Source: Auanema rhodensis
Lineage: Eukaryota > Animalia > Nematoda
Direction of reading: 5' to 3'
Assembly: GCA_964057225.1 (NCBI GenBank)
Contig: OZ059899.1
Location: 7,316,001-7,380,000 of the forward strand
DNA length: 64,000 nucleotides
Positions 2,059 through 54,060 of the stretch are shown here, one piece after another (positions within the stretch are counted from its first letter, which is position 1; every line of letters begins with the position of its first letter). The position numbers and the translations under genes are program-made. Below the pieces are notes generated by a model that ran no database searches, was not told where the DNA came from, and worked only from the letters and a program-made list of their open reading frames with translations.

Positions 2059-4502
2059 TTATTGAGGGAATGGTTTAACAGTTTCTGAAAATAATTTAAA
2101 TATATACGTCATTCAATCTTAAATATAATTTTTTAATAAAAAAAAGTAACATACCACCAAGGAAATAAGCGATTTCCTTATTAATAAAATCTCGAGCATT
2201 CTTTAATCCTGCTGGTTCATTTGGATAAATTGGATACATATCAGAACAATGTCCAGCCTCTGTTATATAGAATATTAAATAAGAAAATAAAAAATATTGT
2301 TTTTACTTGGAATAAGAATACTGGTTAAATGACTTTCAGTATTGTTCCAGTTAAGACCTAAAGAATGCCAAGGATCATATGCTCCATTAGGAAGAACAAT
2401 ATTAGTTGCCTTAAATCAAAAAATATTTAGTAAAACAGCTAAATTTTCAATAAACTTACGGTATAATGATTATTTCCTCCATAACGTTTGTTAAAAGCAA
2501 TATTACGATCTCTAATAGACTTAATGTTGATTGTTGAATCAAACATCTGGGTACACATATCGATGAAATAACTGAAAAAATATTATTTTTGTTATTAAAA
2601 ATCGAAAATTTACTTTAATGGAACAATTTGTTGGAAGATGTTATATCCTTGATCAGTGGTTTGAAGTACTCCCATTTCATTACAACACAACCACATCCAT
2701 CCACGCTGGGCAGCTAAGATCATACAGTAAGATGAGAAATGATATTGAACTTCAACATACCATTGTCCTGGAATTGATGCTCATCATCAAATGTGGTATT
2801 GGAAAGAACCGCAATGGCATTAGAATATGAATTATCAAATGTATTTCCAGCAATATTGTTCAATTTATTATACTGAAATAATATAATATTTTATAAAATT
2901 TATAATATATTATATTAATACCCAAGTAATAACATTAGTAACACGAGTTATAACATCTTGAACTGTTTTATCAGTCATTAGTTTACAAAGATTTGTAACA
3001 TCTAAACCTCCACGAGTTGCATTATTCTGTAAACAAAACAATTTTTGTTATTATCTAATCACTATAAAATAATAATAATGTTATCACTTACTCGTCCATC
3101 ATAAGTATATTGAGTAACATCTTGGAAGAAACTGTATACATTAGCAAAGAAGTTATCAATATCTAACTGTGTTGAATTAACATTGAAAACTGGAACAAGG
3201 CTTAAAACAAGAATAAAACATCCATTTAACTGATTTTGAATTACTTGAAGTATATGCTCAGTTTGTTTCTTCCATCGACTGATAAGCTAAGTTGTTGCAT
3301 TTGCATGAAAGCATCACGAATTGAATCTCCACAGTTTCGGTCAACATCATACATAACGTTTTCTACTACCTGAGCATATTCTATAAACAGAATAAAGTGA
3401 TTATGTAACTGTTCAGAGACTTACGGAAAAAGTCAAGAGTCCAGAGCATTGGAGCACTGCTTGCAACAGCTCCAACAGTGTAAGATGGATATTTCATGCG
3501 GAAGGCAGCAGATAAAAATCCTGAAAAGGAAAACCCATTCAACATTACTAGTTGTTATCTTATAAGAGGCGCAGTGAGCTCGGTGATCAGGTGGCCGAGT
3601 GGTTAAGGCGATGGACTGCTAATCCATTGGGGTTTCCCCGCGTGAGTTCGAATCTCATCCTGATCGAAGTTTTTTGCATTTTTGCAAAAGCAATATTTAA
3701 GTAATTATATTGTTTCATATAAGAAATAATATAATTTATAAGCAGAAATAATTGAAAAAACTGAACCTGGATAAGATCCACCGAAAGTAATCCATTTTGG
3801 GTTTTTGATGTTGAGTTCCTTATTCTTGCTACTAATGAAGAAAGCAATATCTTCCAAAGCTTGATCAACATTACAAGTGGCAAGATGCTCAACTGTCATA
3901 TCTCTTAAATATATCATATAACTTATAATTATGTTGAACATTTCTGTTTGTCATACTTTTCTGGTCTACTGAATCCGAAACAACGGTGTTCCAGTTGGAA
4001 AACATCAGCTCCATACAATTTAGCCAATGTAATGTACGTGTATCCTTCATTATTTGCCCAAGCATCAGTGGCAATTCCTTCTCCTATAATGCATTAACAA
4101 TTAATTGTTTAAAACCATTTATTCATACCTTGAATTAACAGGAAAACGTATCCATTATTCTTACTATAATCAGAGTTGTGCCAGAAGCGCTTAAGAACAA
4201 AGAGAACGATTATTTAAAGAAAACATGATGGCATTTCTCTTACTTGAGCAAATGTTGCATTACTACCATTAAAATGATCTTTTATCTGATTAAACTGTGT
4301 TGCTTGTGCAACAGCTTTTCCTACATTATTATTAGAACGACCTCTTAAATTTATAAATTGTTATGGCATTATACAAAATAATATATTAGAAGTCTTAAAC
4401 TTACCCTACTAGACCATTTTTTGGTCTTCCTAGAAGCATACGATGAGAAGCAGAAACAGCAACTAAAGCTAACAAGCTGAGAACAACGATTGATTTAGTC
4501 AT
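2059..4502 (-). CDS. Secreted/lysosomal serine peptidase, family S28 (prolylcarboxypeptidase-like), multi-exon
   Basis: Signal peptide MTKSIVVLSLLALVAVSA; motifs QIKDHF, LEHRCFG, QALEDIAFFI, WITFGGSYPG (catalytic Ser), KYPSYTVGAVASSAP, NGAYDPWH and GHCSD (catalytic His); stop TAA 2059-2061; TTCAG acceptor directly before the ATG. Confidence 0.92.
3585..3666 (+). tRNA. tRNA-Ser (anticodon GCT), inside an intron of the S28 peptidase gene on the opposite strand
   Basis: Acceptor stem GATCAGG/CCTGATC, D arm GCC-GAGTGGTTAA-GGC, anticodon arm ATGGA-CTGCTAA-TCCAT, long variable arm GGGG-TTT-CCCC, T loop TTCGAAT, discriminator G, followed by a Pol III T-run. Confidence 0.97.
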
Positions 4503-11367: not shown

Positions 11368-14099
11368 TCAATCTAGATCCATATCGAACCAGTACGATGT
11401 CGAAATTGACGGACTTAGTGACTTAACGAAGTGCCACCACTTTTTCGGTATGAATAAGCCATCTCCTGGCTCTAGAATAGCATCAAAGCATCTGGCCTTG
11501 GCAAATAATGGAAATTTCTTATAATCAGGGTTTTCAACATTAACCTGAAAGACCATATATCTTCGAATATCTTCGAATTACTTTGTGCTACCTCACTGGT
11601 GTTAGTTAGAATTCCCTCTTTCATAGGGTAAACATATTCAGTTTCCTGTGGAGATATTAATCTTACGAACTTTTTACCAAATATCTGTAAATCATATTGT
11701 CTGAAATATAATAAGTTGGGTTCACCTGACAAAATATGTTATGACGGGGATCTGTATGTAATGGTGACACAGTTCCTTGAGGACCTATCCATAAGTTTCT
11801 TTCAATATCCTAAAAGTCACTAATCTGTTTTATCCAAAGTTGTGTAGTACCTCTGGTGTGGATCCGGTTACACTACAATAGGAAGGCAATCCTAAATATG
11901 TTTTGAGTTCCGGAACTTGGTCTAATAGTCGATGTTGAGCAAGATAATGTATGCCTTCCTATAAATAACTTAGTCAAAAAAAAATTACTCATAAAAAACC
12001 TCATGAGAGCCTGCTACTGTTTCATTGCATTTAGAGAAAAATTGTGAGGCTGGCATTATCTTCTGAGACCAACCATCCTCAGTATATTTAGAACCTACTT
12101 CAACAGGAACCAGACGCTGTCCCATAGTTTGGTTTAAAAATTCCATACTAAAATAGTACACTTAACTATACTATTCATTTCATTTTTAAACCTCCATTGG
12201 GAACAGGCTAGCCAATTTTTAGCTAATCCTCGTATAACAACAGGAATCTCTTTTAGACCGTATTTTTCAAAAAATGCCTCTTCGCTCATTTCATTCATTT
12301 CAATAGGTATGCTTTCAGAATGGGATAAACAAATGGGTTTTTCAATATTCGCCTATAATGATTTGACTAATTTAGTGTGACAAGAAGTTCTCTTTTTTAC
12401 CGAAACATTCTTCGAAATCTTTGTAATTTCAAGAGATTTTGATAGCGATTCTACAAATTGTATAATAAAGTTGTCATAAAATCTATGACGTCCCATCAAC
12501 AATCCCATATCTAGTGCATTAAGTGCACTCTAAAATAGAAATTAACATGCATAAAATAAAAAATAAATGAAATGTACCTGAAAGTTACCTTCATTTCTTA
12601 ACCTCAAACATTTTGCAAAAGATACAGCAAAATAAAAGTATCGCCAACTTTCATCAACTGTTGAATAATGGCCTGAAATATTACTTTGAGCATTTTTGAG
12701 TTTTTGTTCAACGACTTTTCTTCTAAAAGTATTACCTATATTTAAGTGTTTCCATGCCATATTAAGAAGGAACTTTTCGTCTTCGATTAATTGATCCCAA
12801 GTGTAGGTTGGTTGAAACAACCCTAATTTGAAATTATGAAATAGGATAACATGAAATGCTTTTTATATTGTATTACCTTTAAACATTGGATTGTCACTAG
12901 TCTGTTGCTCTATAACATATACCGCATAACGTGTAAATTTTTGAGTATATCCTTCTCCTATGATCAAAGAATTCAACAATTCAGTTAATGTATCAAGCGT
13001 TATTTTGGAACTATTCTGAAAAACAAAATAGATTATAATCCAATATTATGAAGAATTATATATCTTCTTATTAAAATGATTAGAAAGGACATTTGCAATA
13101 TTGTAACTAAATAAAGCTCACACTAATATCACATAGTAAATGTTTTATATTACGAATAACTGTTGGATCACTACATTCTCCATTGAATGTACATTTTGAT
13201 GAATTTTCATCATAAGACAATATAGAACTGAAAAACAATTATGTTTAAGTTTTTTCATTATTTCCATCTTTTTTATCCAATAATGTAAGATATAATCGGA
13301 TCTTGAAAGTATCAATCTATTTTGGCTTCAAATACATACGTCAAATAATTTTGATATTAAAATAATATTTTGATAACAAACTATTCATGACTGTTCTTAG
13401 CATCAGGAAATATGATAGTTCGATGTAATATGTTCACTTCATCTAAAAACTCTTCAGAAACAACGACTGCTCTATAAATATAAAGAAAGAGACTATTTAT
13501 AAGTTTCTATTTTATGTATTTCTTTAATTTAAAAAAGAATAATAATTACCCTAAGTATCCATAAAATGGTAATACAGAAGATTGAGCATGAGCAGCTAAT
13601 ACAAGTTTTGGATAATTTTCGCGGCAGTAATTCACTACCCACTTAGTTATAAATGCTCCGAACCCATTACCACGAGATTTCTTCAATTGAAAAGAAATAT
13701 TTTTACTTGAAAATATGTTATTAACCTTTAGAACTGCAACTCTTTCCAGTTTAATATATGGATCTTTTATGTTTAACCGAAAAGCTCCTACATGTTCATT
13801 ACCTTAAAATGAGAAGAAATATGTTGTAAACAGTAAATAGAATAGAGAAAGTCTAACTTTTTGAACTAATACATAAGTAATGTTCACAAACATCTTCATA
13901 TTCATCTAATTCCATATCCTTTGGAACACCTTGTTCTTTCACAAAGACCTTAAAATAATTTCAAAATATTACTGAGAAGTCTTATTTTCCGAAGGATAGA
14001 TTATATTAAAAAACCTTTGTATACCTCCATACGAATTTTCACGACATCTTCGAATTCTTTTGTATTGAAATAACATCGTTTTACTTCCAAAACAGATCC
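11368..14099 (-). CDS. jmjd-5: JMJD5/KDM8-type JmjC hydroxylase with an N-terminal GNAT acetyltransferase domain (start codon upstream of 14099, not resolved)
   Basis: C-terminal JmjC: RLVPVEVGSKYT, YLAQHRLLDQVPEL, WIGPQGTVSPLHTDPRHN (HxD), GDGLFIPKKWWHFV, ISTSYWF. Upstream exons join in frame and encode IRMEVFVKEQGVP..MELDEYE, KLERVAVLK.SRGNGFG and AHAQ..VLPFY..LG. Confidence 0.82.
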
Positions 14100-16976
14100 C
14101 TACAATGATAGAAGGTTAGAGAAAAGAAAAAGTCAAAAGAGACATCAGAATAATTGAAATGCATGGTCACATTTATCAGATTATCAATAAATAATGCTGA
14201 TGTTGTTCCAAATTAATAAAAAACGGAACTTAAAATATTGAATAATTTATTATCAGCTAGCTATTGAAAGTAATTCTAATACTTTCCATGTTGCATGGAG
14301 TAATAGATTTTCGAGATTTAATTCATCTAACTGTTATACAATTCATGAAATAATAGAAAAATTAACATTTCTAAATTTCACAATTATATGAAACAAGAGT
14401 TCGCAGTTTATATTATATATGATTGATTACGGTCGTGGAATCAACCCTGTTATACAGTCCCCTCACCTATTAACCAATCACTTATTCTTAAAAAAAAACT
14501 TGAACATGTAAACATGGAATAAATAACAGTTAAAAGTACGAAATTGTATAAGAGCATATGAGAAAAGAGAGAGAGAAGAACAAGTTCTACTCTCCATTAT
14601 GGCAAACACATGCAAATACTCTGATGGACAGAAAAGAAATTCTATCTGACACGAATACATATGACCATGCTGCCCCCTTCCCAACATTATTGCTTTCAAC
14701 AGTTGAACCATGAAAATATGGAATTGATTATATAAATATATAAATAAATATATATATATATATATCCTTAAATGCTTTTAAATTAAAATTTCGTTTAATA
14801 AATGATAACTTTCATTTTAATTCAATGACAATATCCTTTTGAATTTACTCACCACTTCACTATTTCTTTTCTGTAACATTTTTTTATATCTTGTTTGATG
14901 AAAAGAGATGTTGAAAACAATGAAATATAAAAAAACTATGATAATTTAAAATAGCAAAAAACTTGTTGAGATTGAACAAACTTATGCTAATAAACGACTA
15001 GAACTATGACCATTTTTTGTTTGAAAAATATCGTGGGAGTTGAGTATCGCTGAAATCTCAACGAAATCGGAATTAGTTTTCAAACTAAACGAATAGCCGG
15101 TCAGAAAGATTATGAAACACATATAAAGGAAAAGAGAACACTTGTAACCCGATTAAAGCAGTGAATTTGATGAGTTAACAATATTGAAACAACGTTCTAT
15201 AGGAGATCAAAAATGATTTTTATGCGCATATAGTTTTAATAGTTCTCCTATAGTCTAACTATGAATATAATCATCTCATGATAATGGCATTTAAAATTGT
15301 CAATATGATTCCCCCGCTTTCATTGCTAGTGATCATGAAGTTGCTCATTTTGCTATTTCTCTCTTTCTCACGCACCCTGTCTCTCCGTTTTTATGCTTTC
15401 GCTTTCTTAACTTTCCTAATCTTAACCTTTTATTCCATCCATTTTGTGTAACATGTCTCTTTGTTGATGACTAAATATGTCTACCATTCATTTCTAATTC
15501 CAATAGAGGTATGATTGAAAAATTGGTACCTTTCCAATTCATCTAAACATAAATATTTTATAAAGATTTGGCTAGTTAAATGCTCCAGAAGGCAGCAATT
15601 TCCAAAAATTCGATAACAAACAAGCTATTTGGTTAATAGGATTATCTCTTCTACATATAATTTTTGAACAGATTTAGTACAAAGTAAAACCTCAAAACTT
15701 GGTCATTTTGTTTTGTTGCTGGAGAATGAGCCTTTTGACCAATGAAATAGAAACACTTTATCGAAATAATGATCTATAGTATATTGAGGATAATGATGTT
15801 CTGTTATCATTATTATTCTTCGAAAACAAACTTTAAAAAGTTTTATTTTCGACATTCATCTGAATTCTTTGAGTTTATTTATTTGTTACCAATATAGTAC
15901 AGTACCATCCATGTACTTTCCAGTAACAAATCAATATATCATATAAGTCTAGTTTCATATGCCTAGCCATCCGATTATATTCAGACAAAAAAGATATGAC
16001 GACAGCAAAAATGGCCATACCAATATAGCGACATACAACAACTACTAATAACTGAAATATAGCCCACAGTCATGCAGCACTTATGCATTGATGAAAATAT
16101 TTTTTCCCATCCAGCAAAGAATAATGATAATACGGCTGAAAACAGAAAAATCCAGTCCACAATACTTTGGATAAACTACACTACTATAGAAGACTGAGGC
16201 AATGAATAAATTAAGATCAAGTACATGTTCCTCAATGCCGATTTACTTTATTACATAATTTTTGATCGGATTGTTATGGCTTCGTATTAAAGCCATTACC
16301 GTGACACTAAGCTCAAGACATACAATATCACTTGTCAAATGCCATTATTCGCTTTTTCACTTCAAAGAAGAACTCTCATAATAGTATAAATAAACCAGTC
16401 AATGTTTAAATATTTTCCTTAGTTTCAACTTTCTTATCTTTTCTCATCTCCTCATGTCCTCATCGAACATAGTTTTCAGTCGATTTTTTTCATTTTCTTC
16501 TTAACTTTCAATTCTTTGTTTTCATCCTTAGGTATTCAACTATTTCAGTAATGTTTCCTTTATTCCAAAATATAACATGAAAGAAGAAGAAACGTGGAAG
16601 AATTTAGTTTGAATACATTTCCAGAATGCATTCATCATCGTTGTCAGTAAAGGAAATGATTAAACGGCGACAAACGAGCTTTATAACGGCTACGACTGAT
16701 CATTGAACTCATGTACTCAACAGTAGGATCTTCTTGCAGTTGGAATTTTTAATCGAAAACTATTAGTTGTCGATATTTTTGGTTGTAAGGTACTTCGTAA
16801 GATACACATATTATCTTCGTAACGAGCGTCTTACTAGTATCGCCGTTTACATTTTCAAGCCCTTTTTGGTTATATTCCCTCTGCTTCTATTCGATGAAGC
16901 CTACTTCTCCAAAGCTTCACGTACATCCATTGGGGATCGATGGAGGCGGAGCCAGCAGCCCCTGCGTACGCATATT

Positions 16977-19900
16977 TGACGCGTGCGACATCGCGCAGCA
17001 TCCCGACCGACGTGCAGCCCCTACAACCCCTCCCGCCTTCGCCGCACTAATACTAAGCCACAAGCGCTAAGAGGCGACCAGACGTCTATTCAGCTACTCG
17101 ATGAATTTGGCTCACATTTGATTCTTTAAAACAGTTCCAAGATAACATGTACTTTTAGCAATCTATATATATTTATATATACTAATATTTCATCAATTTA
17201 TTTGTTCGATATTTATCATTACTATTTCTTATTATTCTCCAAAAAGAATTACTGAGCATACGTGACGTACGTGATGGCGTCAAATGCTACACCATCAATA
17301 CTATTTCAGTTAATTAAGCATCGTTGATCGGTTGCATTTATTATTCCAACTCTTTTTGTTTCTAACCACTTTTTTTATTCTGTGCTGTAAAACGTTTTAT
17401 CAATATTTTACTATTTTAGCTTATTATTCATTATCGCCTGACAGATTGACGGAGCTAAAATCTCCTTCGTCTTTAAATTCAAGAATTTTACAAGAAAATA
17501 ATATGGGGGAATTGGAAACTGAGCAAGACACTCTCCAGAATTTCGCTGCTTCTGGCAGAGCTGGCAGACGCAATGCATTACCAGAAATTGAGGTTTGCTT
17601 TCTTTCTCATTTTTTATTCTTTTACTTTCTTGTTCTTTCAAACTTCTTTTCTAAGCATTCGTTTATTTATCTACTATTACATTATATTCATGAACATATA
17701 TGCATGTATGGTATTGGGAGAAGAAAACATAAGATTAAAAAGAGCGAGTGAATCTCTGCGGATTTTACTTTCATTTATAGTTTATCTTTTTCATTTTTTC
17801 GTAGTTGTCATTCAAAAACCTATGTTTTCTATTGAACTGCTGCAGGGAAAGAATGCACATGGCTTATTTTGATGTATTCTGTCATCTTGTTGAATCTTTT
17901 TTTTCAATTTTTACATAGAAATCGAAAGACGAAAATTTGGGTTGCTTATTCTACGCACGACATGAGATCGAGCTTTCTCGTTGATTGACTTTCTTCGACT
18001 CTCCCTCGTTCACTCTGACTATCACTTCGTCGTTTCCAATATCCCTTTCTTCTACTGGGGCGACATTTTAATCACAATTATAATATCTTGTTCTATGGGC
18101 AGCAATATAGATTATTAGTTTTTCCAATTTGAATTATACCATATGAAAGTCCATTCAGTTTAGAACGGTTAACATTAAGACAAAAAGCCCTCTAATAAGC
18201 AATTAAGTTCGTTTGTCTTCCATTCTTTGAGATCGCTCTGAACGGCTTTCCCCATTCGAAATTTATTCATTTCCTTTTTAAGCTAATGCTCTAATGATCC
18301 ATGCTAATTAGCTGGAAAAAAGATGGAATTGCTTGCTTCCTGCTGACTAAACACTTTGTGTGTGTGTCATATGAGTGTGACAACTTCTTTCTTTCGATTG
18401 TTTCCTGTGGCCACAAACAAGACATTGTTTCAAATCAAAGTATATAAACGTTCAAAAAGAGAAGCATTCAACAAGAATATTTATGGACAAAATAACCGAA
18501 ATATGTATTCTGATGAAGTATTTTGTAATTGTTATCGGCGACTATGTCGATTCCAAACTAATTGTCCCTATTACCTTCTCGTAACGTTTTCATCTGAATC
18601 TTGTCTCTTGTTAGTACATGACTAATGATAGAGCTAGAAAGCAGGCAGCATCGTCGCCAACACATGTGGCTTGCTACTGTAAAATCAAAGAAAACGAAAT
18701 TTCTTGCATAATCATAATAAAATACTTCCTAACCGCCTTTTGTTGTCCTGCAACATAAGTGTTAATTCAGGGCATATTAATAAAAAGGACGAGGTAGATT
18801 ATGTGAAACAAATAAAAAATGTCAGGTTTTATTTTGATCTCTATTACTGTAATTGCTCTTATTAAGACCTTGAAGTGATCAAAACCATTATGAGCATATG
18901 TTTTTCCGTTTAATTTCAATATAATCTTATAACATACTGAAAAATGTCATGACCTAAGCATTAACATATATATATATATATATATATATATGAGTTTTTA
19001 ATATAAAAACTTCTTCATGTTTTTTTCTACCAAACGCTTTTGTTTCCTTTCCGAGCATCATTCATTGATAAACAGTTCAAATAACACACATCTTTAATCG
19101 ATTTACTAATACTAATGTCGCGGAAGTAGCGGATTTAGAGAAACTGTGAACAAGTTGAAAGAAAAGATGAGAGGTATAGCGAATATAGAGAGAGAGAAAG
19201 AAAAGATAAGCAAGTTCAGAGAGACAACTCCTTTCACAAACATAAAGTATGTGAATTGAAGAGGGTAGAAAGAAAAAGAGCAAAATACGGACGTGACCAG
19301 TCGAGATGACATCGTAAAATGTTGTTCAAACATGCAAATTCAGCTGCTTGATGACGTCAGACTTCTATGAATATGAAAAAAATTGAAGAGAAATAGATGA
19401 AAGCAGAGGAAGCACTTTCCTCAATTAAAGCGTTCTGATTGACTGTGAATACTTCTTCCTAGCAACATCGCATAATTCCCGATACAAAGATGTGCAGTGC
19501 CGTTCCTTTTTTCTAAATTGTAATCGAGCAACCCGTAAAATCCGATTTCGTTTATATAACCATCACAAATATTTTTTTTCAAAGCGGTCTACTATCTCAT
19601 AGTATTTCCTGTGAATCGTTTGAGCTGATGATGCCTGCTAGTAGGGGGGTATGAATTCCTTTCACTTTCCTACAGCACTCCTCTCGCTGTAAACAAGAAA
19701 AGCTAGATTAATCCGAATCAATGCCACGATACATGATCGGGTGTGTACAGGAAGGAGAGGTAACGAGAGAAAATGGAAAAGCGGGAACAAATGAGAGAAA
19801 GATACTTGCCAACGCAGATACGTGGCTATATCGTTGTCATGGAAATTTTTCTTCTATCATCATCAGCTGAGAAAAATAACAGTTTCTATTTTTGTATTTG

Positions 19901-22900
19901 CAATTGAAATATTACAACTTCGATTGATTCATAACATGACATACTGCTCGAACTATAAACCCACGCAAATTGCAAGCGACAAACGCTCAATATGTGAACT
20001 GATACAGATTGAACATCATATCATTCAAACGTTATCAGTGTGTGACGTAGACTTCTTAGTTGCTTCATATCTCACTTTTTCTAGTCTTCCTCATTGAACA
20101 ACACAAAGAAAAACTGATAGCTATCTCGGGGGATTATAATATCCTGAGAAAGATAATTTTCTTTCAAGTAGCAAGATGACGGGAAAAAAACTTTCGAACC
20201 GCAGTATTTGATTTCTATGTTTTAGCTTTCTCTATATATGTAATCAAAACAGTGAAGCACTCCCTGAAAGTCATTAACTATTTGCTGGTTATAGAAATTG
20301 TTCAAAAAATGTTGATATGATATAGAAGAGCAGACAGGTGGTTAAAGGAGAGAAAGAAAGAGAAAAGAGACATAAAAGAGTAAAACAATTGGAGAAAAAC
20401 GTCATTTATGAACAGTGACTGTTTGAGGTGTAGTTTTCATTGACAATTTTTACACACTCATACTAATCATAAAAGTCATGTGCTCTAAGATAAAGAAAAA
20501 TAGTTGTATGTGGGTATTCATTCTTTTGTTAATAATATCTAAAATTATTGAGGAAGTAGTGGATATTCAATCTTATTACTAAGACATTATAGGCCATTAT
20601 AAATATTAGGCACCATTTTCACGTATTTAGGCTCGCCAGTCAAGAACAATGAACAAAGATTCTAATAGTTTATGTTTCATATACGGCTTTTAGTGTGTCA
20701 ATATGTTTACTATTGCTTGGTAGTTATGTCTCAGTTGGGGTAGATTACTTCAAATGACACCAATAATTTTGCTTTGAAATGAGTCTGATCATAATATCAT
20801 TCGTGAAAGGCAGACTACAGCTGCTCAAATATAGAAATATATTCTTATGTGCTTTCACGCGAAAACCTTGAATGAAAAGGGCTCTTGAACTAAAAATGAA
20901 GAAACAAAAAGATTTAGAAAAGTATTATCTAAAGACAACTCTTTTCAGGTCGAAATCAATGATCCGGGAGCGTTAAAGCTGGCAGAACGCCTCTCAGATA
21001 TGACAGCCCATTGCGAGAATGAGCAGGAGGCTCGACGTCGCCAGGAAGCTCAAAGTAAGTTCAAATTATACTACTCTATGTTAAGAAAAAGTGAATTCTA
21101 ATAGAAAAAATCCATTTCTGCCTATATCACGCCTTATAATAAACTGAGTTTATCAAATATTTCGCTATTGATAAGATATTATATTAGCGATAACTATCTT
21201 CAAAAATTCTTTTGCTTAATTTTCTTATAAATAGAACGTTAACAAGGAAATATAAATGGAATTCAGAGAAGATTTGGAGGGGTTCCCATACTTTGGATGT
21301 GAATAATATCTTTCGCCATACTAAGAATATACATGATTAGTGCCATTTTGAACGGAACTGAGAAACCTTGTCTCATATCCATCCTAATCTTCAATTTCCT
21401 TCTTAGCTAAACAACATTGATATTGCAACCAGCTACAAGGATTTGTTATTGCCGTACATGTGAATCAGTTAATCGGGATGAAAATTTTGTTAAATCTGGC
21501 ATAACGAGAAATTATGCTTAGAAGTCAAAAAGGAATTTTCTAATAGTTAGTGAGAGAGAGTGATAGAATTTCAATATTCTATTTTCCTATCTTAAACAAT
21601 CATTGAAAATTCAAATATGGCGTTTGACGCAGGGCAAAAACGAGAAATTTACTTGAAACCAAGTTGAATCAGATTTTTCATAGTACCTTGTGACGCAGTC
21701 ATTTGTACTTTGCATTTCAGCTTTTTCTTCGAAACTGAAATTTGATTTTATAACACTTTATTAAATTTTTGTTAGAACCAAATCGTCAAAATACTATTTC
21801 ACTGTCATTTTTAGAAAGCTATATCAATTTGTTTGAATATCTAACTAAATGAAACACGATAGAATTGCATCCAAGTTCATATTTTAACGATTACATAAGT
21901 TCATGAGAGGTACACTGGAGAACATGTGCTACTTATATCAATATCTAAGAAGGTGGTAGCAAAACAGTGACAAAGATTATGAAGTAAATATTTACAATTT
22001 TCAATTGTAAAATTTTTATTTTTTTATAATTCCGCAGAGATTCAACAGATGATGGTGACGCAACCACAAATTGTGACTAATTGAAGATGTGAAGTGGAAA
22101 GTCAGTCTGGCCACAAATAGTCACTACGTCACAAAATTATCAAATTTGAGAGATTTAACGACAAAGTTTCCTGGTAAAGCGATACATCATACCAAGTTTC
22201 TTTAAAAACTTTAAATGAGTAATTTAATTAAAACTATTTGAATGGTTTTAAATGTCATATAAGTAATCGTAAATCGAATTTCAAAAAGAAGTTTAAATAT
22301 CTTCTTTTTTCTGTTGAAATGCTTAATGAGGCATTGCTATCTTGCAAAGTATGTAGGGAAATTCAATCACAGTTCATCTCGAATAGAACTGTTTCTCAAA
22401 GGCTTGCCGTTTCTTATCAATTAAAGTGACGTTGACTTTAAAGAGTAACAGATAAAATCTCCTCAAGTTTCAAACTATTATATAGTCCAAGTTACAGTTC
22501 ATTGTTAAAAAAAGGTTGGATAATCATATTCTTTTTCTTATCACAAGACCAACATTTATTACATTAACATGTATTTCCTTCATCAACTGAAAGCCTCCCA
22601 AGGGAAATGCCCACAACGAAGCTTGTTACATCGTCTTTTCCTCATCTTCGCTCACTGGCTACAAACCAGTGATCTATGTGAAAAGTTCAGAATCTTCTTC
22701 TTTTCATTCGAGATAGGGACCAGATGACGCAACTTTCGAATAGATTATTTGGTCCTTGAAGGCGACGAGCAACACATCACACAAAATTTTTCTGTTCATC
22801 CTTCAAACAACAGCTGTTTGAAAACGTCACTGTTCAACGTCGAAGACGATGATGATTTAATGGAGCTGACGTCACGAAATAGCGGTCGTCAGAAAATAAT

Positions 22901-23359
22901 TGAAGAAAAGAAATAAATGAACATTTTGGTTGCCGGTATGGAAGTCGTTTATTATGACGATAGTTTGAAAAAAAACGGGGAAGTAAGAAGAACGATTGGA
23001 GCATATAGTGTATAAACATTCTCAAATACACGAACGATTTCTAAAGAAAAATGCTTCAGTTCTCCTGAGAATTAAAGTCCTATCTCGATAAAACCAACGA
23101 GTAAGAGTATCTGCAGCCAAAAATATGTAGTATGTTCATACAGAAAACGTTGGGATTTACTGAGATTCGTATTCAAAATAAGAAATATATGCTCACTCCA
23201 CTGTGCTAGTTAACTTTTTTTTCAACCACAATTGCTAAGTTCAAAGTCTTATCTTAATCTCAAAAACATAACCGGAAGCGTTTTGAATGGTCCATACTTC
23301 TCAAACCTACAATTCGCCCGTAGTATTAGAAGAACAGCGAGAGCAAACAGTCGACGTCA
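16977..23359. promoter_or_regulatory. Cluster of cAMP-response elements (CRE) across the PKI promoter and introns
   Basis: Full TGACGTCA at 19352 and 22867. TGACG/CGTCA half-sites at 16977, 17263, 17278, 17447, 20043, 20177, 20400, 21625, 21691, 21784, 22056, 22127, 22427, 22725, 22825, 22887 and 23355. GC/CpG-rich promoter-like patch at ~16940-17100. Confidence 0.65.
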
Positions 23360-23996
23360 TCGTTAACGTTAACTGAGGAGAAGGAGATGAGATGAGACGG
23401 GTCGAAAGGTTGAAAGCACAAACACCGAGTGCCCGCTGGTCAGGGAGCAGTGTTTAGACGTCTGTCTACATCTCTATCTTGTCATCGGAATATCGAGGTG
23501 CGTGTGAAGCTACGTGCACTTGATTTTCGATGTTTTCTCTTCCTTTACCTTTTGAAGAATTGTGAGTTTCTTCCGGTTCCGGGGACATGACATGGTTCTT
23601 ATGAATTAAAGAAAAGCAAAAACAGAAGGAAAGGGTAATCTAAATGATTGGAGTAAGATGCTACATCAAATACTCTATTTCAATGAAGACATAACAAATC
23701 AAAAGAAATGAACAAGAAGTACGAAGATATACAATGAATTGTTGTAAATGTATTGAAGAACCTTTACAACCTGTTCATACAATCTTTGTTCTGATAAACC
23801 CATATAGAATACATCAACGAAATGTTAAAAAGAAAAGGGAAAATTTCCAACTTTTTAAACGAAAAGTTGAAATAAACAATTGTGTTCATTTAAAACACTT
23901 TCTCACCTATAAACTTAATTTAATTCATGTTTTTTGTATCATGTTAATACTAATTTTTCTTTTTCAGATTCTGCAACAGGACATTCCGCCTCATAA
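17503..23996 (+). CDS. cAMP-dependent protein kinase inhibitor (PKI family), ~74 aa, three exons with an alternative last exon
   Basis: Exon 17503-17592 MGELETEQDTLQNFAASGRAGRRNALPEIE (PKI signature F...GR.GRRNA). Exon 20949-21054 VEINDPGALKLAERLSDM... (NES-like), TTTTCAG acceptor and GTAAGT donor. Last exon 23968-23996 (NSATGHSAS*) or 22038-22084 (KIQQMMVTQPQIVTN*). All splice phases are compatible. Confidence 0.88.
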
Positions 23997-24979
23997 TCTT
24001 CTGCGGGGCCAGTGCCGGTCATGTCTCACTTGTTACTATTCAAATGAGAAACAACAATCACCTCATAATTATTTGTATTTTTTCAATCCACCATGTCAAA
24101 AAGTATTTTTTCTGCTGTCATAAGTCTTATGACAATCTTCCAAAAAGGTTTATATGGTTTTCCTTTTAATTCCGTACATTTTATGTAAATTATTACGGGT
24201 CTTAAGATCTAGCATAACTGTAATCGCCGTGTTGGTTTCTATTCTTAACTCCTTCATCGGAATGGTTATGACCCAAACACCACACGTGAACCACGAGCTT
24301 TGTGTATAAATCCCATTTAAAGCAATTTTAACCTTTTTTGGTTTCTGTACAATTGACTATTAGGCCAATTATAACGGTCTTATTATATAATCCCTACCCC
24401 GGTTTGAATTATCTCAACTTTGTCTTGCCTGCAAGAAATTTTTAACCATCTGATGAATATAAATATCCATGTCACAACTAATTTCATCTATTTCATATGA
24501 TCCATGAATCTGTTCTGATAATATTTCCGTATAAAACGAAAAGAAAATTCCAAACGAAGTCCTTACTCATTAAAAGAAAAGTACAAAAAGGGAAAAAGCG
24601 TACCATTTTCATATTTGATATTTCCAAATTCAAACAGAAGCAAAAACTTCTTATTAAATTAAAAGTATCCTGAAAACTATAAGAAGAATAAAATTGAACA
24701 TTATTTTTGTAAAGATATTCTTATTGCATGCAAGTTTAAATAAACAAGAATGAAAGATTTGGTTTTGAAAATTTAAAAAAATATATATTATTAGGCAGTT
24801 TCTTAAACATATGTCTATAATGATATTGAATGAAAATAAATGTAAACCCATATAATTCTTTAAAGAATGAAACATTAAAGCTTAATGCAAAGACGCATTG
24901 ATCACATGATTTTGGAGAATCGTGGAATTGAATGAAATTGGAAGAGAGAAAGAAATGTCGAACGATTTCATAATAAAAT

Positions 24980-41048: not shown

Positions 41049-41547
41049 TTAGATGATTCCGATTTTGTTGGCAACATCCAAGGCATCGTAGTCAGGTGTA
41101 AGTCTGACGTAAGCCTTCTTTTGGAGAAGAGGGGTGATAAGGGTGTTGATCTTCTCAACGTCGATGTTGTAAAGCTTCTTAACAGCAGCCTTGATGTGGT
41201 GCTTATTGGCATTGACGTCAACGATGAAGACGAGGGTATTGTGATCCTCAATCTTTTTCATAGCAGATTCAGTGGTCAATGGGTGCTTAACAATGGTCCA
41301 TGCATCCAATTTGCTGCGAGCTGGAGCGCTCTTGCGTGGGTAGCTACAATTATATTTATTACAGAAATAACAAAGCACTAATATACCGTGGAACACGAGA
41401 AGTCTTGAGGGTCTTTGGGCGACGGAAGTGCACTGAAGTGCGGACCTTCTTCTTGTGGACGGTCTTCTGTCCCTTAGCGACCTTCTTCTTGGCATCAACG
41501 GCCTTAGCGACCTTCTTCTTCTCAACGGCTTTAGTTTTAGGAGCCAT
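41049..41547 (-). CDS. rpl-25: 60S ribosomal protein L23a (uL23)
   Basis: [65 protein letters not shown]; one ~43-nt intron; strong codon bias. Confidence 0.97.
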
Positions 41548-52290: not shown

Positions 52291-54060
52291 GTCGCATTTA
52301 TCATTTCTTTCATCAATTCTCTGTTTTCTTAAGTGTTTTTGCTTAATTTTATTTCAAGAATTACTCTAGATATGTTACATAGCAATGACCTCGACTCATT
52401 CTTTAGAAATCATTAGCATTGTACAAAATGTTTAAAAGAAGTATTTGCTTAAAGGTTTATTCCCTTCGCTTTATATGTAGCATGTTCTCTTATTTTTAGC
52501 CATAGCCATATTAGTTCATTAAGCATATTTTACTTTTCCGGTGCCTTGATTACATGAAGATTGCATTTTATTTTTGTTCTTTCAAAATAATAAAGAGCAT
52601 TTGCATGCTTAAGTTCAGCTGTTTTATAAAAAAATAAAATATTTTCTTATTGTTGTAGGATTGGAGATTAAATCCACAAGGACTTTTGATTGGTTATGAT
52701 AATACACTTTCCAGGTTTCTCATTGTTCAAAGAGCCTAAATAAATCTCAAATTTAGGCAAGCTGGATTACACGTTAGTCAAAGTTTGCAAGCCGCTACAA
52801 CTATCACAAACCAACAGCATCACCAATTTATAAATTCAGCTTTTCGCCCGGATAATCAATATTAAACTATGAGTTAATTAACGATTAGATATTCCGAAAG
52901 AATTTTTTTTTCGGAAATAATTTCGAAACCTTCGTTTAACGTTTTTTACTATTTGCAACCACTTTAACATAATTTTCGAAAACTAATTCGAAAGCATACC
53001 ATACTTAACCACAATCATATTACATATGAAGTTTATAAAAAGAATAACCAGACGTAGAGCCTTGTAAGGGCTCATCACTCTATTCGAAATACTATTTTGT
53101 ATTCTCTAAATAAATTATTTTAATTTTATTTAAGAGTTTTTTCATTTAAAAATATAATTATAATTTTATGAATATCATGAAATATAAGAAACCCTAAAAG
53201 TAACCTGTAACATCAACATAAACATAAGGTTGTTGTTCATACTTGAATGACTTGTATGTAAGATATATGGAAATATGTTAATGATTATGAGATAAATGAC
53301 GTCACAAGTCTATTATCTAAAGTTATAATCTTAAGAAGTCAAAAGGGGTGATTAGGTAAAATTAGGTGATAATTGGTTGGCAAGTCGGTAGAAACAAAGA
53401 GTTTTGATTGGTTATGACCTTTTGACCGTTGTACCGAGAATTACATAATGAAAGGCAGATGATTAAAGGACTTACCGGACAGATGTTGCCATACCTTTAT
53501 AAGGAATTGCCGGCTGATTTCAAACAAAAATAAAAACATTTTTATATTTTACATAACTTATAGTTAATAATAAAATATTTCAATAAAACTAAAGAAGAAT
53601 GATATTGTAACTATAAGGCCATTACGTTTAATATAAAATTCATGTTCAATCTGTCAGATTGAAACCATTGTTTGTCAGTTTTATTCAAAAATCTGTTCAC
53701 CATATATGCTATGATTTGACAGACAAAAAATCATTAATTATACGTGAAAATCTGTATATTTACCACCTTAAATGCATATCTGACTATATGTGGACAGTTC
53801 TAATGATGGTCCACTAGATAACATCTATACTGTCGCGTGTCTAGTACATGGTTGTGGGACATCAACCTATCTTTTGTCTTCGTTTTTTTTCTTTTTTTTT
53901 CTAACCCACCGTTCATTTTTTCAGATCATCAACCTCATTTTTATTGACCTCAATAGTTTTTAATTAAATTTTTATTCTATTCAAGTACGTATAAAACAAA
54001 AAAAAATACCCATATATGAAAAAGATCAATATTATTATTTTTGTACAAAATAGTTTTGCT

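What the first reader, a model, noticed from the sequence alone, without database searches (positions are those of the whole stretch)
16940..23996. Nematode PKI microprotein gene in a CRE-dense regulatory domain: candidate cAMP-PKA-CREB-PKI feedback circuit
Seen in sequence: a ~74-aa ORF split over ~6.5 kb. It keeps the PKI inhibitory determinants (Phe at P-11, Arg at P-6, RRNA pseudosubstrate with Ala at P0) and has an NES-like ALKLAERL (PKI-alpha has LALKLAGLDI). It sits in ~10.8 kb of otherwise non-coding DNA, whereas neighbouring genes are 0.1-0.5 kb apart. The interval holds 2 perfect TGACGTCA plus ~17 half-CREs; a rough estimate at ~32% GC predicts fewer than 0.1 full and ~7 half sites in 7 kb. 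Established: PKI inhibits and exports the PKA catalytic subunit, CREB binds CRE, and PKIs are characterised mainly in vertebrates. Inference: a CREB-inducible PKA brake in a nematode, easy for gene predictors to miss.
Basis: partly seen in the sequence, partly recalled or inferred. Interest (0 to 1): 0.85.

Follow-up and report, generated by a model that had tools for sequence, protein, structure and literature searches.

The report
Nematode PKI gene with conserved CREs
This is a real, expressed three-exon gene for a 74-residue inhibitor of protein kinase A, the counterpart of the already annotated C. elegans gene K09E9.4; the less ordinary part is that its introns and promoter hold cAMP-response-element-type sites that are kept across several nematode genera.

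Summary
The CDS 17503-17592 / 20949-21054 / 23968-23996 (+) encodes 74 aa. Exon 1 alone passes the Pfam PKI threshold (34.1 bits against a cut-off of 25).

The gene itself is not new. Orthologues are predicted in more than 20 nematodes, including C. elegans K09E9.4, which the literature and WormBase already name as the worm PKI.

The CRE enrichment is real. There are 22 TGACG/CGTCA matches against 8.4±2.8 in dinucleotide shuffles (0 of 1000 reach 22). It is the most enriched of all 512 5-mers compared with the rest of the window. Both full TGACGTCA sites lie in conserved non-coding blocks shared with Auanema; block B is 88% identical, while neighbouring coding exons are about 67%. A full CRE sits in intron 1 in all six species examined that have introns. 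TGACG is enriched at the orthologous locus in Auanema, Cylicocyclus and Ancylostoma.

No transposon, RNA structure or coding signal explains these blocks.

A CREB-driven negative feedback on PKA is plausible but untested. Other bZIP factors bind the same sites, and four TGACGCA sites point to C/EBP-ATF-type input as well. Verdict: new member of a known family with a credible, conserved and testable regulatory signature.

The parts
16902..17091 (.). Conserved GC-rich non-coding block A, about 330-520 bp upstream of the 5' end of the mRNA. Candidate core promoter or outron element.
   Evidence: 74% identical over 196 bp to Auanema L002 9372-9565. No RNA contig covers 16900-17299. No Rfam hit and no fold signal, z about 0. 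tblastx similarity in all frames, so it is not coding.
17255..17285 (.). Proximal pair of CRE-like sites: TGACGTAC at 17263 and CGTCA at 17278, about 225-240 bp upstream of the ATG.
   Evidence: Auanema has a pair at an equivalent distance (-310/-305), although the sequence does not align.
17420..17592 (+). Exon 1: 5' UTR from the acceptor ttttag|c (17419/17420), then CDS 17503-17592. Residues 1-30 carry the PKA-binding helix and the RRNA pseudosubstrate.
   Evidence: Pfam PKI 34.1 bits against cut-off 25. Aligns to PKI-alpha 5-26 in PDB entries. RNA contigs start at 17414 with 1 mismatch and 5 unaligned letters, which would fit a trans-spliced leader; the letters were not shown. A conserved 5'-UTR 12-mer, GATTGACGGAGC, is shared with Auanema.
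17593..20948 (+). Intron 1 (3356 nt).
   Evidence: Joint 17590->20947, 'GT..AG (cut +2)', equal to 17592/20949, in all four runs at contig depth 32-102.
19268..19372 (.). Conserved intronic block B. It holds the full CRE TGACGTCA (19352-19359), a CRE-like TGACATCG, ACGTGAC, an octamer ATGCAAAT (19332) and CAGCTG (19341).
   Evidence: 88% identical over 109 bp to Auanema L002 11613-11721, and the CRE is retained. Part of it aligns to the intron-1 full CRE of Cylicocyclus and Ancylostoma duodenale, with ACGTGA invariant. No RNA fold signal.
20445..20501 (.). Conserved intronic block C. It has no CRE.
   Evidence: 81% identical over 59 bp to Auanema L002 12803-12860.
20949..21054 (+). Exon 2 (residues 31-65 and the first base of codon 66). 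It carries the NES-like KLAERLSDM segment.
   Evidence: Conserved in all correctly modelled nematode orthologues. RNA contigs cover it at depth 17-55.
21055..23967 (+). Intron 2 (2913 nt). It holds 12 of the 20 CRE-type sites.
   Evidence: Contigs end at 21054 and continue with 30 letters identical to 23968 onward, which confirms the junction 21054/23968 in all four runs.
21625..22731 (.). Cluster of four TGACGCA(A/G) sites, the C/EBP-ATF/CRE hybrid type.
   Evidence: 4 of the 5 TGACGCA in the 64-kb window lie here, at 21625, 21691, 22056 and 22725.
22772..22912 (.). Conserved intronic block D. It holds an E-box CAACAGCTGTT, the full CRE GCTGACGTCAC (22867-22874) and the half site GGTCGTCA (22887).
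   Evidence: 71% identical over 153 bp to Auanema L002 14539-14684. The full CRE with its flanks and the GGTCGTCA are identical in both.
23328..23588 (.). Conserved intronic block E. It holds ACGTCATC (23355) and other conserved stretches.
   Evidence: 68% identical over 277 bp to Auanema L002 15119-15381. The weak hairpin (z -1.8) is not conserved on its 5' arm, so this is not a microRNA.
23968..24632 (+). Exon 3: the last 9 codons plus the stop (to 23996), then a 3' UTR of at least about 636 nt. The UTR includes a conserved block at 24391-24467.
   Evidence: 922-nt spliced contigs leave about 665 nt beyond exon 2. The 3'-UTR block is 83% identical to Auanema L002 16455-16535.

Best explanation
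What it is. The locus is the orthologue, in an unnamed rhabditid (clade V) nematode, of C. elegans K09E9.4. It encodes a 74-residue member of the PKI family of heat-stable inhibitors of the cAMP-dependent protein kinase.

Shown:
- The mRNA is made and spliced from three exons.
- Exon 1 encodes the conserved PKA-binding determinants: Phe at P-11, Arg at P-6, and Arg-Arg-Asn-Ala with Ala at P0.
- The promoter-proximal region and both introns carry a homotypic cluster of CRE-type bZIP sites. Part of that cluster lies in non-coding blocks that are more conserved than neighbouring exons.

Inferred from family knowledge. The peptide occupies the substrate cleft of the free PKA catalytic subunit as a pseudosubstrate. 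A kin-1 gene is noted elsewhere in this genome. The Leu/Leu/Met segment of exon 2 may allow CRM1-dependent export of the complex.

Inferred from the conserved sites. Transcription of the gene is driven or tuned by a CRE-binding bZIP factor. CREB/CRH-1 is the leading candidate. Sustained cAMP-PKA-CREB activity would then raise the level of the PKA inhibitor, which is a delayed negative feedback. It would probably act in neurons, where the C. elegans orthologue is enriched.
For: Gene and family:
- Pfam PKI 34.1 bits for exon 1 alone, and 44-46.6 bits over profile positions 6-67 for full-length orthologues.
- Alignment to PKI-alpha in PDB entries.
- By my count on the alignment, the peptide differs from Auanema CAI4228602 at 8 of 74 residues (89% identical). 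It is collinear with K09E9.4 and about 20 other nematode proteins.
- Collinear synteny with Auanema over 20 kb, and the GNAT-JmjC neighbour is kept even in Toxocara.

Expression:
- Spliced contigs in 4 runs, with exon depth 32-102 against intron depth 0-4.
- K09E9.4 is listed among neuron-enriched genes of adult C. elegans in PMC6105014 S11 Table. It also appears in S9 Table, in a later sheet than the three I read, most likely the neuron sheet.

CRE cluster:
- 22 observed against 8.4±2.8 in shuffles, 0 of 1000.
- CGTCA is the top 5-mer of 512 against the rest of the window.
- It is the top non-microsatellite 5-mer when six orthologous loci are pooled.
- Enrichment recurs in Auanema (21 against 9.4), Cylicocyclus (18 against 6.0) and A. 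duodenale (18 against 8.2).
- A full TGACGTCA lies in intron 1 in 6 of 6 species with introns.
- Both full CREs and two half sites are retained in aligned blocks with Auanema.

Exclusions: no repeats, no RNA family or fold, and no reading-frame preference in tblastx.
Against: - No experiment or dataset available here shows CREB binding, cAMP inducibility or PKA inhibition.
- TGACGTCA is bound by several bZIP families. Four sites are TGACGCA, a C/EBP-ATF-type half site.
- The full CREs are intronic, 1.8 and 5.4 kb from the ATG, and not in a TATA-proximal position.
- Enrichment is weak in C. elegans (6 against 2.6; 51 of 1000 shuffles) and C. brenneri (4 against 1.6; 85 of 1000).
- Enrichment is not evident in C. 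auriculariae or Toxocara. In C. angaria the tiny gene and its 3-kb upstream stretch show none, but the 2 kb downstream of the gene hold 6 TGACG and a full CRE at +1941.
- Trichostrongyle genes (Nippostrongylus, Haemonchus) are intronless and so lack the intronic blocks.
- Searches of papers and supplements on CRH-1 and CRTC-1 targets found no mention of K09E9.4.
- The NES is imperfect. In the HMMER alignment of the Auanema protein, which is identical to the window peptide over this segment, Leu39 of PKI-alpha falls on Glu and Ile46 on Ala.
Confidence: 0.5

Rival explanations
1. The gene is the same PKI orthologue, but the conserved CRE-type sites are read by other bZIP factors: ATF-7/ATF2-type, ATF-4 with C/EBP partners, CREB-H/CRH-2, or ATF-6/XBP-1-type on the ACGTGA motifs. 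PKI expression would then be coupled to stress, immune or unfolded-protein signalling and not to a cAMP-CREB feedback.
For: Site heterogeneity: 4 TGACGCA(A/G), 3 TGACGTA, and an ACGTGA that is invariant across four genera. In one C. elegans toxicology dataset K09E9.4 went down with HgCl2 and methylmercury (PMC9118485). A mammalian review lists HIF and AP-1 inputs to PKIB (PMC11083500).
Against: The two best-conserved sites are perfect palindromic TGACGTCA, the optimal CREB/ATF1 site. The orthologue's neuronal enrichment fits activity- and cAMP-linked control. Nothing here discriminates between bZIP families.
Confidence: 0.25
2. The CRE-containing blocks are ordinary cell-type (neuronal) enhancers. 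CRE sites would contribute to constitutive expression together with POU/octamer and bHLH E-box sites, with no inducibility and no feedback.
For: Blocks B and D also hold a conserved octamer ATGCAAAT and a conserved CAACAGCTGTT E-box. The C. elegans orthologue is a neuron-enriched gene.
Against: A homotypic cluster of 20 CRE-type sites, most of them outside the aligned blocks and kept at similar density in four genera despite sequence turnover, is more than a single co-factor site in a cell-type enhancer would need.
Confidence: 0.17
3. The CRE density is a compositional or chance effect, or a repeat family, and has no regulatory meaning.
For: The interval was chosen after the sites had been seen. 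The rest of the window is mostly coding, so it is an imperfect background.
Against: 0 of 1000 dinucleotide shuffles of the interval itself reach the count. The motif ranks first of 512 5-mers. No repeats were found. The same enrichment and orthologous retention of individual sites appear in other genera.
Confidence: 0.03
4. The peptide is PKI-like in sequence but does not act mainly on PKA. It could, for example, inhibit or serve another basophilic AGC kinase such as PKG.
For: No biochemical data exist for any nematode PKI in the literature searched. Haemonchus and Cooperia have RRDA in place of RRNA.
Against: All the determinants that give PKI-alpha its PKA specificity are present and are invariant across clade V orthologues: Phe P-11, Arg P-6, RRNA, hydrophobic P+1. 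A kin-1 gene is noted in the same genome (a lead only).
Confidence: 0.05

Closest known systems
C. elegans K09E9.4 (NP_001024780, UniProt Q564X6) and its deposited nematode orthologues, for example Auanema sp. JU1783 CAI4228602
   Same: The same three-exon structure, with introns at the same codon positions. The same N-terminal MGELE...F..S.R.GRRNALPEIE and exon-2 KLAERLSDM. The same neighbourhood, with an MFS sugar transporter downstream on the opposite strand. A full CRE in intron 1.
   Different: Introns here are 3.4 and 2.9 kb, against about 0.7 kb each in C. elegans, and they hold far more CRE-type sites: 22 matches here against 6 in C. elegans over the same stretch, 600 bp upstream of the ATG to the stop. 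No protein from this genome is in the public collection searched.
Vertebrate PKI-alpha/beta/gamma (Pfam PF02827; PDB 1ATP, 3WYG)
   Same: Size of about 75 aa. The pseudosubstrate RRNA with Ala at P0, Phe at P-11 and Arg at P-6. A Leu-rich segment about 15 residues downstream. The Pfam match covers profile positions 6-67 of 69.
   Different: An N-terminal MGELE extension. P+1 is Leu and not Ile. In the NES register found by HMMER (Auanema protein, identical to the window peptide over this segment) the pattern is L-x3-L-x2-M-x-A, so two of the five hydrophobic NES positions of PKI-alpha are lost. No biochemical characterisation exists.
CREB-induced negative feedback in cAMP signalling (ICER from the CREM gene, PDE4D induction; from my own knowledge) and up-regulation of PKIB that shuts down CREB signalling in beta cells (Blanchet et al. 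2015, as summarised in PMC11083500)
   Same: The logic is the same. A product whose transcription rises with pathway activity damps the pathway, and PKI is a known node for such damping in mammals.
   Different: In the mammalian case cited, the PKIB promoter is bound by HIF1-alpha and not by CREB. A direct CRE-driven PKI gene has not been shown in any nematode. Here it is only inferred from conserved sites.

Membership tests
PKI, cAMP-dependent protein kinase inhibitor (Pfam PF02827) | Score above the Pfam gathering threshold | tested here: met
   Exon 1 alone scores 34.1 bits against the cut-off of 25, E 3.4e-8. The full-length Auanema orthologue, 89% identical by my count, scores 44.1 bits over profile positions 6-67 of 69.
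PKI, cAMP-dependent protein kinase inhibitor (Pfam PF02827) | Pseudosubstrate Arg-Arg-Asn-Ala with Ala at P0 and a hydrophobic residue at P+1 | tested here: met
   R22 R23 N24 A25 L26 in the translation. These align to RRNAI of PKI-alpha.
PKI, cAMP-dependent protein kinase inhibitor (Pfam PF02827) | High-affinity determinants upstream: Phe at P-11 and Arg at P-6 | tested here: met
   F14 and R19 align to F10 and R15 of PKI-alpha. Both are invariant in all nematode orthologues aligned.
PKI, cAMP-dependent protein kinase inhibitor (Pfam PF02827) | Small stand-alone protein of about 70-80 residues | tested here: met
   74 aa from a confirmed spliced mRNA.
PKI, cAMP-dependent protein kinase inhibitor (Pfam PF02827) | Leucine-rich, CRM1-dependent nuclear export signal | tested here: inconclusive
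HMMER, run on the Auanema protein (identical to the window peptide over this segment), aligns KLAERLSDMTA under LALKLAGLDI. Export was not testable.
PKI, cAMP-dependent protein kinase inhibitor (Pfam PF02827) | Nanomolar competitive inhibition of the free PKA catalytic subunit | not testable with these tools
   This needs a kinase assay with the peptide and KIN-1.
CREB (CRH-1) target gene | Full palindromic CRE TGACGTCA and/or clustered half sites above chance | tested here: met
   2 full sites against 0.099 expected, and 22 half-site matches against 8.4±2.8. Top-ranked 5-mer.
CREB (CRH-1) target gene | Sites conserved at the orthologous locus | tested here: met
   Both full CREs and two half sites are retained in aligned blocks with Auanema. 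A full CRE lies in intron 1 in 6 of 6 species with introns. Enrichment recurs in 3 other genera.
CREB (CRH-1) target gene | Promoter-proximal position of a functional CRE | tested here: inconclusive
   Only CRE-like sites (TGACGTAC, CGTCA) lie 225-240 bp upstream of the ATG. The full CREs are intronic. The transcription start is unknown because the 5' end of the mRNA looks trans-spliced.
CREB (CRH-1) target gene | CREB occupancy, and cAMP- or CREB-dependent expression | not testable with these tools
   No ChIP or perturbation data were reachable. K09E9.4 is absent from the CRH-1/CRTC-1 supplements that were held.

The most novel reading that the evidence does not exclude
Rhabditid nematodes have kept, for the whole span separating Caenorhabditis, Auanema and the strongylids, a direct transcriptional feedback. 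In it, CREB/CRH-1 bound to intronic and promoter CREs induces the PKA inhibitor PKI in neurons. This would set the duration of nuclear PKA signalling. The mechanism is directly testable on the uncharacterised C. elegans gene K09E9.4.
Probability: 0.35. Interest if true: 0.55.

Novelty: new member of a known kind. Interest (0 to 1): 0.4.

Why it matters
PKI is a potent endogenous brake on PKA, yet its physiological role is poorly understood even in mammals. No invertebrate PKI appears to have been studied functionally.

This work shows that the nematode gene is expressed. It also shows that the gene carries a conserved cluster of CRE-type sites, including sites in non-coding blocks more conserved than nearby exons. 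That yields a concrete and cheap hypothesis, a transcriptional feedback on cAMP-PKA signalling, which can be tested in C. elegans with existing mutants (crh-1, kin-2, gsa-1, acy-1) and a reporter for K09E9.4.

For genome annotation, it documents a microprotein gene whose exons 2 and 3 are lost in about a quarter of the deposited nematode models.

Tried and rejected
- Transposon or repeat origin of the TGACG sites: the repeat finder found only four chance-level pairs.
- Non-coding RNA or microRNA in the conserved blocks: there is no Rfam hit in the region, and the window's only hit is a tRNA at 3585. Fold z-scores run from -1.8 to +0.8. The one weak hairpin, in block E, is not conserved on its 5' arm.
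- Hidden coding exons in the blocks: tblastx similarity is equal in all frames and on both strands. No splice joints other than the two expected ones were seen.
- Block A as a 5' exon: no RNA coverage.
- Literature on CREB control of the worm PKI: searches for K09E9.4, pki-1, kin-1/kin-2 with PKI, crh-1 with CRE, and PKIA or PKIB with CREB feedback turned up nothing. Supplements of five CRH-1/CRTC-1/neuronal papers were also checked. The only mentions of the gene are its naming as the PKI orthologue and its neuronal enrichment. Lakhina 2015 and Blanchet 2015 are not held.
- Organism identity: the runs are coded, and no protein of this genome appeared in the searches. I can only say it is a clade V rhabditid whose nearest relative at this locus is Auanema sp. 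JU1783.
- Typing the spliced 74-aa peptide into the search tools: I left this out. I used exon references, an ORF reference that runs into intron 1 with region 1-40, and the Auanema orthologue P0002 as a proxy.
- Structure prediction was not run, because PKI is a short disordered peptide on its own.

Full report
1. The observation.

An ATG at 17503 opens a 30-codon exon that ends at a GT donor (17592|gt). A ttttcag acceptor opens a 106-nt exon at 20949-21054, which is again followed by gtaag. A tttttcag acceptor opens the last 29 nt at 23968-23996, ending in TAA. Joined in a script, the three pieces give a 225-nt CDS and a 74-residue product. By my count on that translation, Phe14, Arg19 and Arg22-Arg23-Asn24-Ala25-Leu26 sit at P-11, P-6 and P-3 to P+1. 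HMMER aligns them to residues 5-26 of PKI-alpha from solved PKA complexes.

2. Is it a gene?

Four public runs of one study hold contigs that lie on the stretch 16900-22899. Their library type is not on record. Exon contig depth is 32-102, while introns show 0-4. That pattern is what RNA gives and what genomic DNA does not.

- All four runs show one joint, 17590->20947, 'GT..AG (cut +2)'. This is the predicted junction 17592/20949.
- All four show contigs that stop at 21054 and continue with 30 letters identical to the window from 23968 onward. This is the second predicted junction.
- The 922-nt contigs leave about 665 nt after exon 2, so the 3' UTR reaches about 24632.
- The contigs begin at 17414, next to a ttttag|c acceptor at 17419/17420, with one mismatch and five unaligned letters. 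That would fit a trans-spliced leader, but the letters were not shown, so it remains an inference.
- Nothing covers the conserved GC-rich block at 16902-17091.

3. What family?

Exon 1 alone passes the curated Pfam threshold for PKI (PF02827): 34.1 bits against 25. A search using an ORF reference restricted to its first 40 residues returned 20 nematode proteins, all precomputed as PF02827. A second search with the Auanema protein returned 23.

The hits include C. elegans K09E9.4 (NP_001024780, chromosome X), several Caenorhabditis species, Ancylostoma, Necator, Cylicocyclus, Angiostrongylus, Nippostrongylus, Haemonchus, Cooperia, and the clade III genera Toxocara and Anisakis. The nearest is Auanema sp. 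JU1783, with 8 differences in 74 residues by my count on the alignment. Full-length orthologues match Pfam profile positions 6-67 of 69 at 44-46.6 bits.

The alignment confirms exons 2 and 3 residue by residue. Intron positions are the same in C. elegans, Auanema, Cylicocyclus and A. duodenale.

The locus is collinear with Auanema from 9.6 to 29.9 kb: a CHIP-like gene, a GNAT-JmjC gene on the minus strand, PKI, an MFS transporter on the minus strand, and a Med26-like gene. The GNAT-JmjC neighbour is kept even in Toxocara.

4. Is the gene new?

No. Baskaran et al. 2015 (PMC4674680) state that PKI proteins occur in many invertebrates, 'cf. K09E9.4 in Caenorhabditis elegans'. WormBase-derived tables list K09E9.4 as the orthologue of PKIA, PKIB and PKIG. 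Several deposited proteins are named cAMP-dependent protein kinase inhibitor.

K09E9.4 appears in the neuron-brain rows of S11 Table of Kaletsky et al. 2018 (PMC6105014). It also appears in their S9 list of 'unique' tissue-specific genes, in a later sheet than the hypodermis, intestine and muscle sheets that I read, most likely the neuron sheet. I found no functional study of any nematode PKI.

Six deposited models keep exon 1 and then run into the intron or elsewhere. No product of this window's genome surfaced in either protein search.

5. The CRE cluster.

Counts and chance:
- TGACGTCA occurs four times in the window against 0.61 expected, and two of them are in the gene.
- TGACG/CGTCA occurs 22 times in 16940-23996 (3.1 per kb) against 52 in the other 56.9 kb (0.91 per kb).
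- Among all 512 strand-collapsed 5-mers, CGTCA is the most enriched in the interval, and the overlapping ACGTC is second.
- In 1000 dinucleotide-preserving shuffles of the interval itself the mean is 8.4±2.8 and the maximum is 18. Full sites are expected at 0.099.

Site types: the sites are not parts of repeats. They are heterogeneous: two TGACGTCA, one TGACGTCG, three TGACGTA, and four TGACGCA(A/G). Those four are 4 of the 5 TGACGCA in the whole window, all within 1.1 kb of intron 2.

6. Conservation.

Against the Auanema locus the introns are almost entirely unalignable, and neighbouring coding exons are only 66-68% identical at the DNA level. Five non-coding blocks nevertheless stand out:
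- Block A, 16902-17091, 74% identical.
- Block B, 19268-19372, 88% identical.
- Block C, 20445-20501, 81% identical.
- Block D, 22772-22912, 71% identical.
- Block E, 23328-23588, 68% identical.

Block B contains the first full CRE. Block D contains the second, with identical flanks (GCTGACGTCAC), and a retained GGTCGTCA. Block E has a retained ACGTCATC. A 12-mer with a half site in the 5' UTR is also retained, and both species have a pair of half sites 225-310 bp upstream of the ATG.

Looking wider:
- A full TGACGTCA lies in intron 1 in all six species examined that have introns: the window, Auanema, Cylicocyclus, A. duodenale, C. elegans and C. brenneri.
- The strongylid intron-1 CRE aligns with part of block B, with ACGTGA invariant.
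- TGACG enrichment against local shuffles recurs in Auanema (21 against 9.4; 0 of 1000), Cylicocyclus (18 against 6.0; 0 of 1000) and A. duodenale (18 against 8.2; 1 of 1000). It is weak in C. elegans (6 against 2.6; 51 of 1000) and C. brenneri (4 against 1.6; 85 of 1000).
- Pooled over the six loci against their own 20-kb flanks, CGTCA is the top 5-mer apart from GA and CA microsatellites.

Exceptions:
- The very compact gene of C. auriculariae shows no cluster.
- The equally compact C. angaria gene shows none in the gene or its 3-kb upstream stretch. It does have 6 TGACG and a full CRE (+1941) in the 2 kb downstream.
- The single-exon Toxocara gene shows no clear cluster.
- The trichostrongyle genes are intronless. 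Haemonchus nevertheless has 12 TGACG in the 3 kb around the gene.

The blocks show no RNA family, no fold signal and no frame preference. They therefore behave as conserved cis-regulatory DNA.

7. Mechanism.

Shown:
- An expressed PKI-family peptide with all PKA-binding determinants.
- A conserved cluster of CRE-type sites in its promoter region and introns.

Inferred from the family (solved PKA:PKI complexes): the peptide blocks the free catalytic subunit as a pseudosubstrate. A kin-1 gene is noted elsewhere in this genome (a lead, not checked). Export is uncertain. In HMMER's register, found with the Auanema protein that is identical to the window peptide over this segment, three of the five hydrophobic NES positions of PKI-alpha are kept (L, L, M) and two are lost.

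Inferred from the sites: a bZIP factor controls transcription. I put this at roughly one in two for the combined statement. I put it at about 0.35 for the strict form, which is CREB-dependent, cAMP-inducible and conserved.

The main rivals are other bZIP factors, favoured by the TGACGCA and ACGTGA motifs, and constitutive neuronal enhancers, favoured by the conserved octamer and E-box in blocks B and D. Chance or composition is effectively excluded.

In mammals, the review held (PMC11083500) reports PKIB induction through HIF1-alpha binding its promoter in beta cells, as part of a feedback on CREB signalling. It does not report a direct CRE-driven PKI gene.

8. Verdict.

The gene is a new member of a known and already annotated family. 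The conserved CRE architecture is, as far as the held literature shows, unreported, and it gives a directly testable hypothesis in C. elegans.

Noticed in passing
window 11371-14638 (-); L002 3933-7842; L009 1-5004: The upstream neighbour is a GNAT acetyltransferase fused to a JmjC/Cupin_8 (KDM8/JMJD5-like) domain. The same fusion is called as a single gene in Auanema and in Toxocara canis, and in both it lies head-to-head with PKI. The fusion and the microsynteny therefore span clades III and V.
   Followed up: partly
L003 10001-10222 (Nippostrongylus); L010 10001-10228 (Haemonchus placei); L009 10001-10240 (Toxocara): The PKI genes of two trichostrongyles are intronless and sit in a different gene neighbourhood, which suggests retrocopies or intron loss. 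In Toxocara, residues 1-80 are encoded in one exon. Haemonchus and Cooperia have RRDA in place of RRNA at the pseudosubstrate.
   Followed up: partly
window 16902-17091: A 190-bp GC-rich block, 74% identical to Auanema, with CCAAT-like (CCATTGG) and CCCCTCCCGCC motifs and no RNA coverage. It is probably the core promoter or outron of the PKI gene, but its function is unexplained.
   Followed up: partly
window 19332-19346 and 22805-22816: A perfect octamer ATGCAAAT next to CAGCTG in block B, and a CAACAGCTGTT E-box in block D. The octamer and the block D E-box are identical in Auanema; the block B CAGCTG reads CAGATG there. This hints at POU and bHLH co-regulators.
   Followed up: no
window 24391-24467: A 77-nt stretch of the PKI 3' UTR is 83% identical to Auanema, more than most coding sequence nearby. 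It is a possible post-transcriptional control element.
   Followed up: no
window 41213-41220 and 53297-53304: The other two perfect TGACGTCA sites of the window. Their gene context was not examined.
   Followed up: no
P0001, P0003, P0004, P0006, P0007, P0014 (public protein models): Six deposited nematode PKI models keep exon 1 but replace exons 2-3 with intron read-through or unrelated sequence. UniProt auto-names such as 'NET domain-containing protein', 'Transcriptional regulator' and 'CHZ domain-containing protein' on PKI orthologues look wrong.
   Followed up: partly
window 3585-3666 (+): A tRNA gene. It is the only Rfam gathering-level hit in the window.
   Followed up: no
L004 13036-13700; L007 14650-14990: In both strongylids a second dense TGACG cluster, with two full CREs 140-160 bp apart, lies downstream of the PKI stop codon. 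It starts about 240 bp beyond it in Cylicocyclus and about 750 bp beyond it in A. duodenale. It has no aligned counterpart in the window.
   Followed up: no
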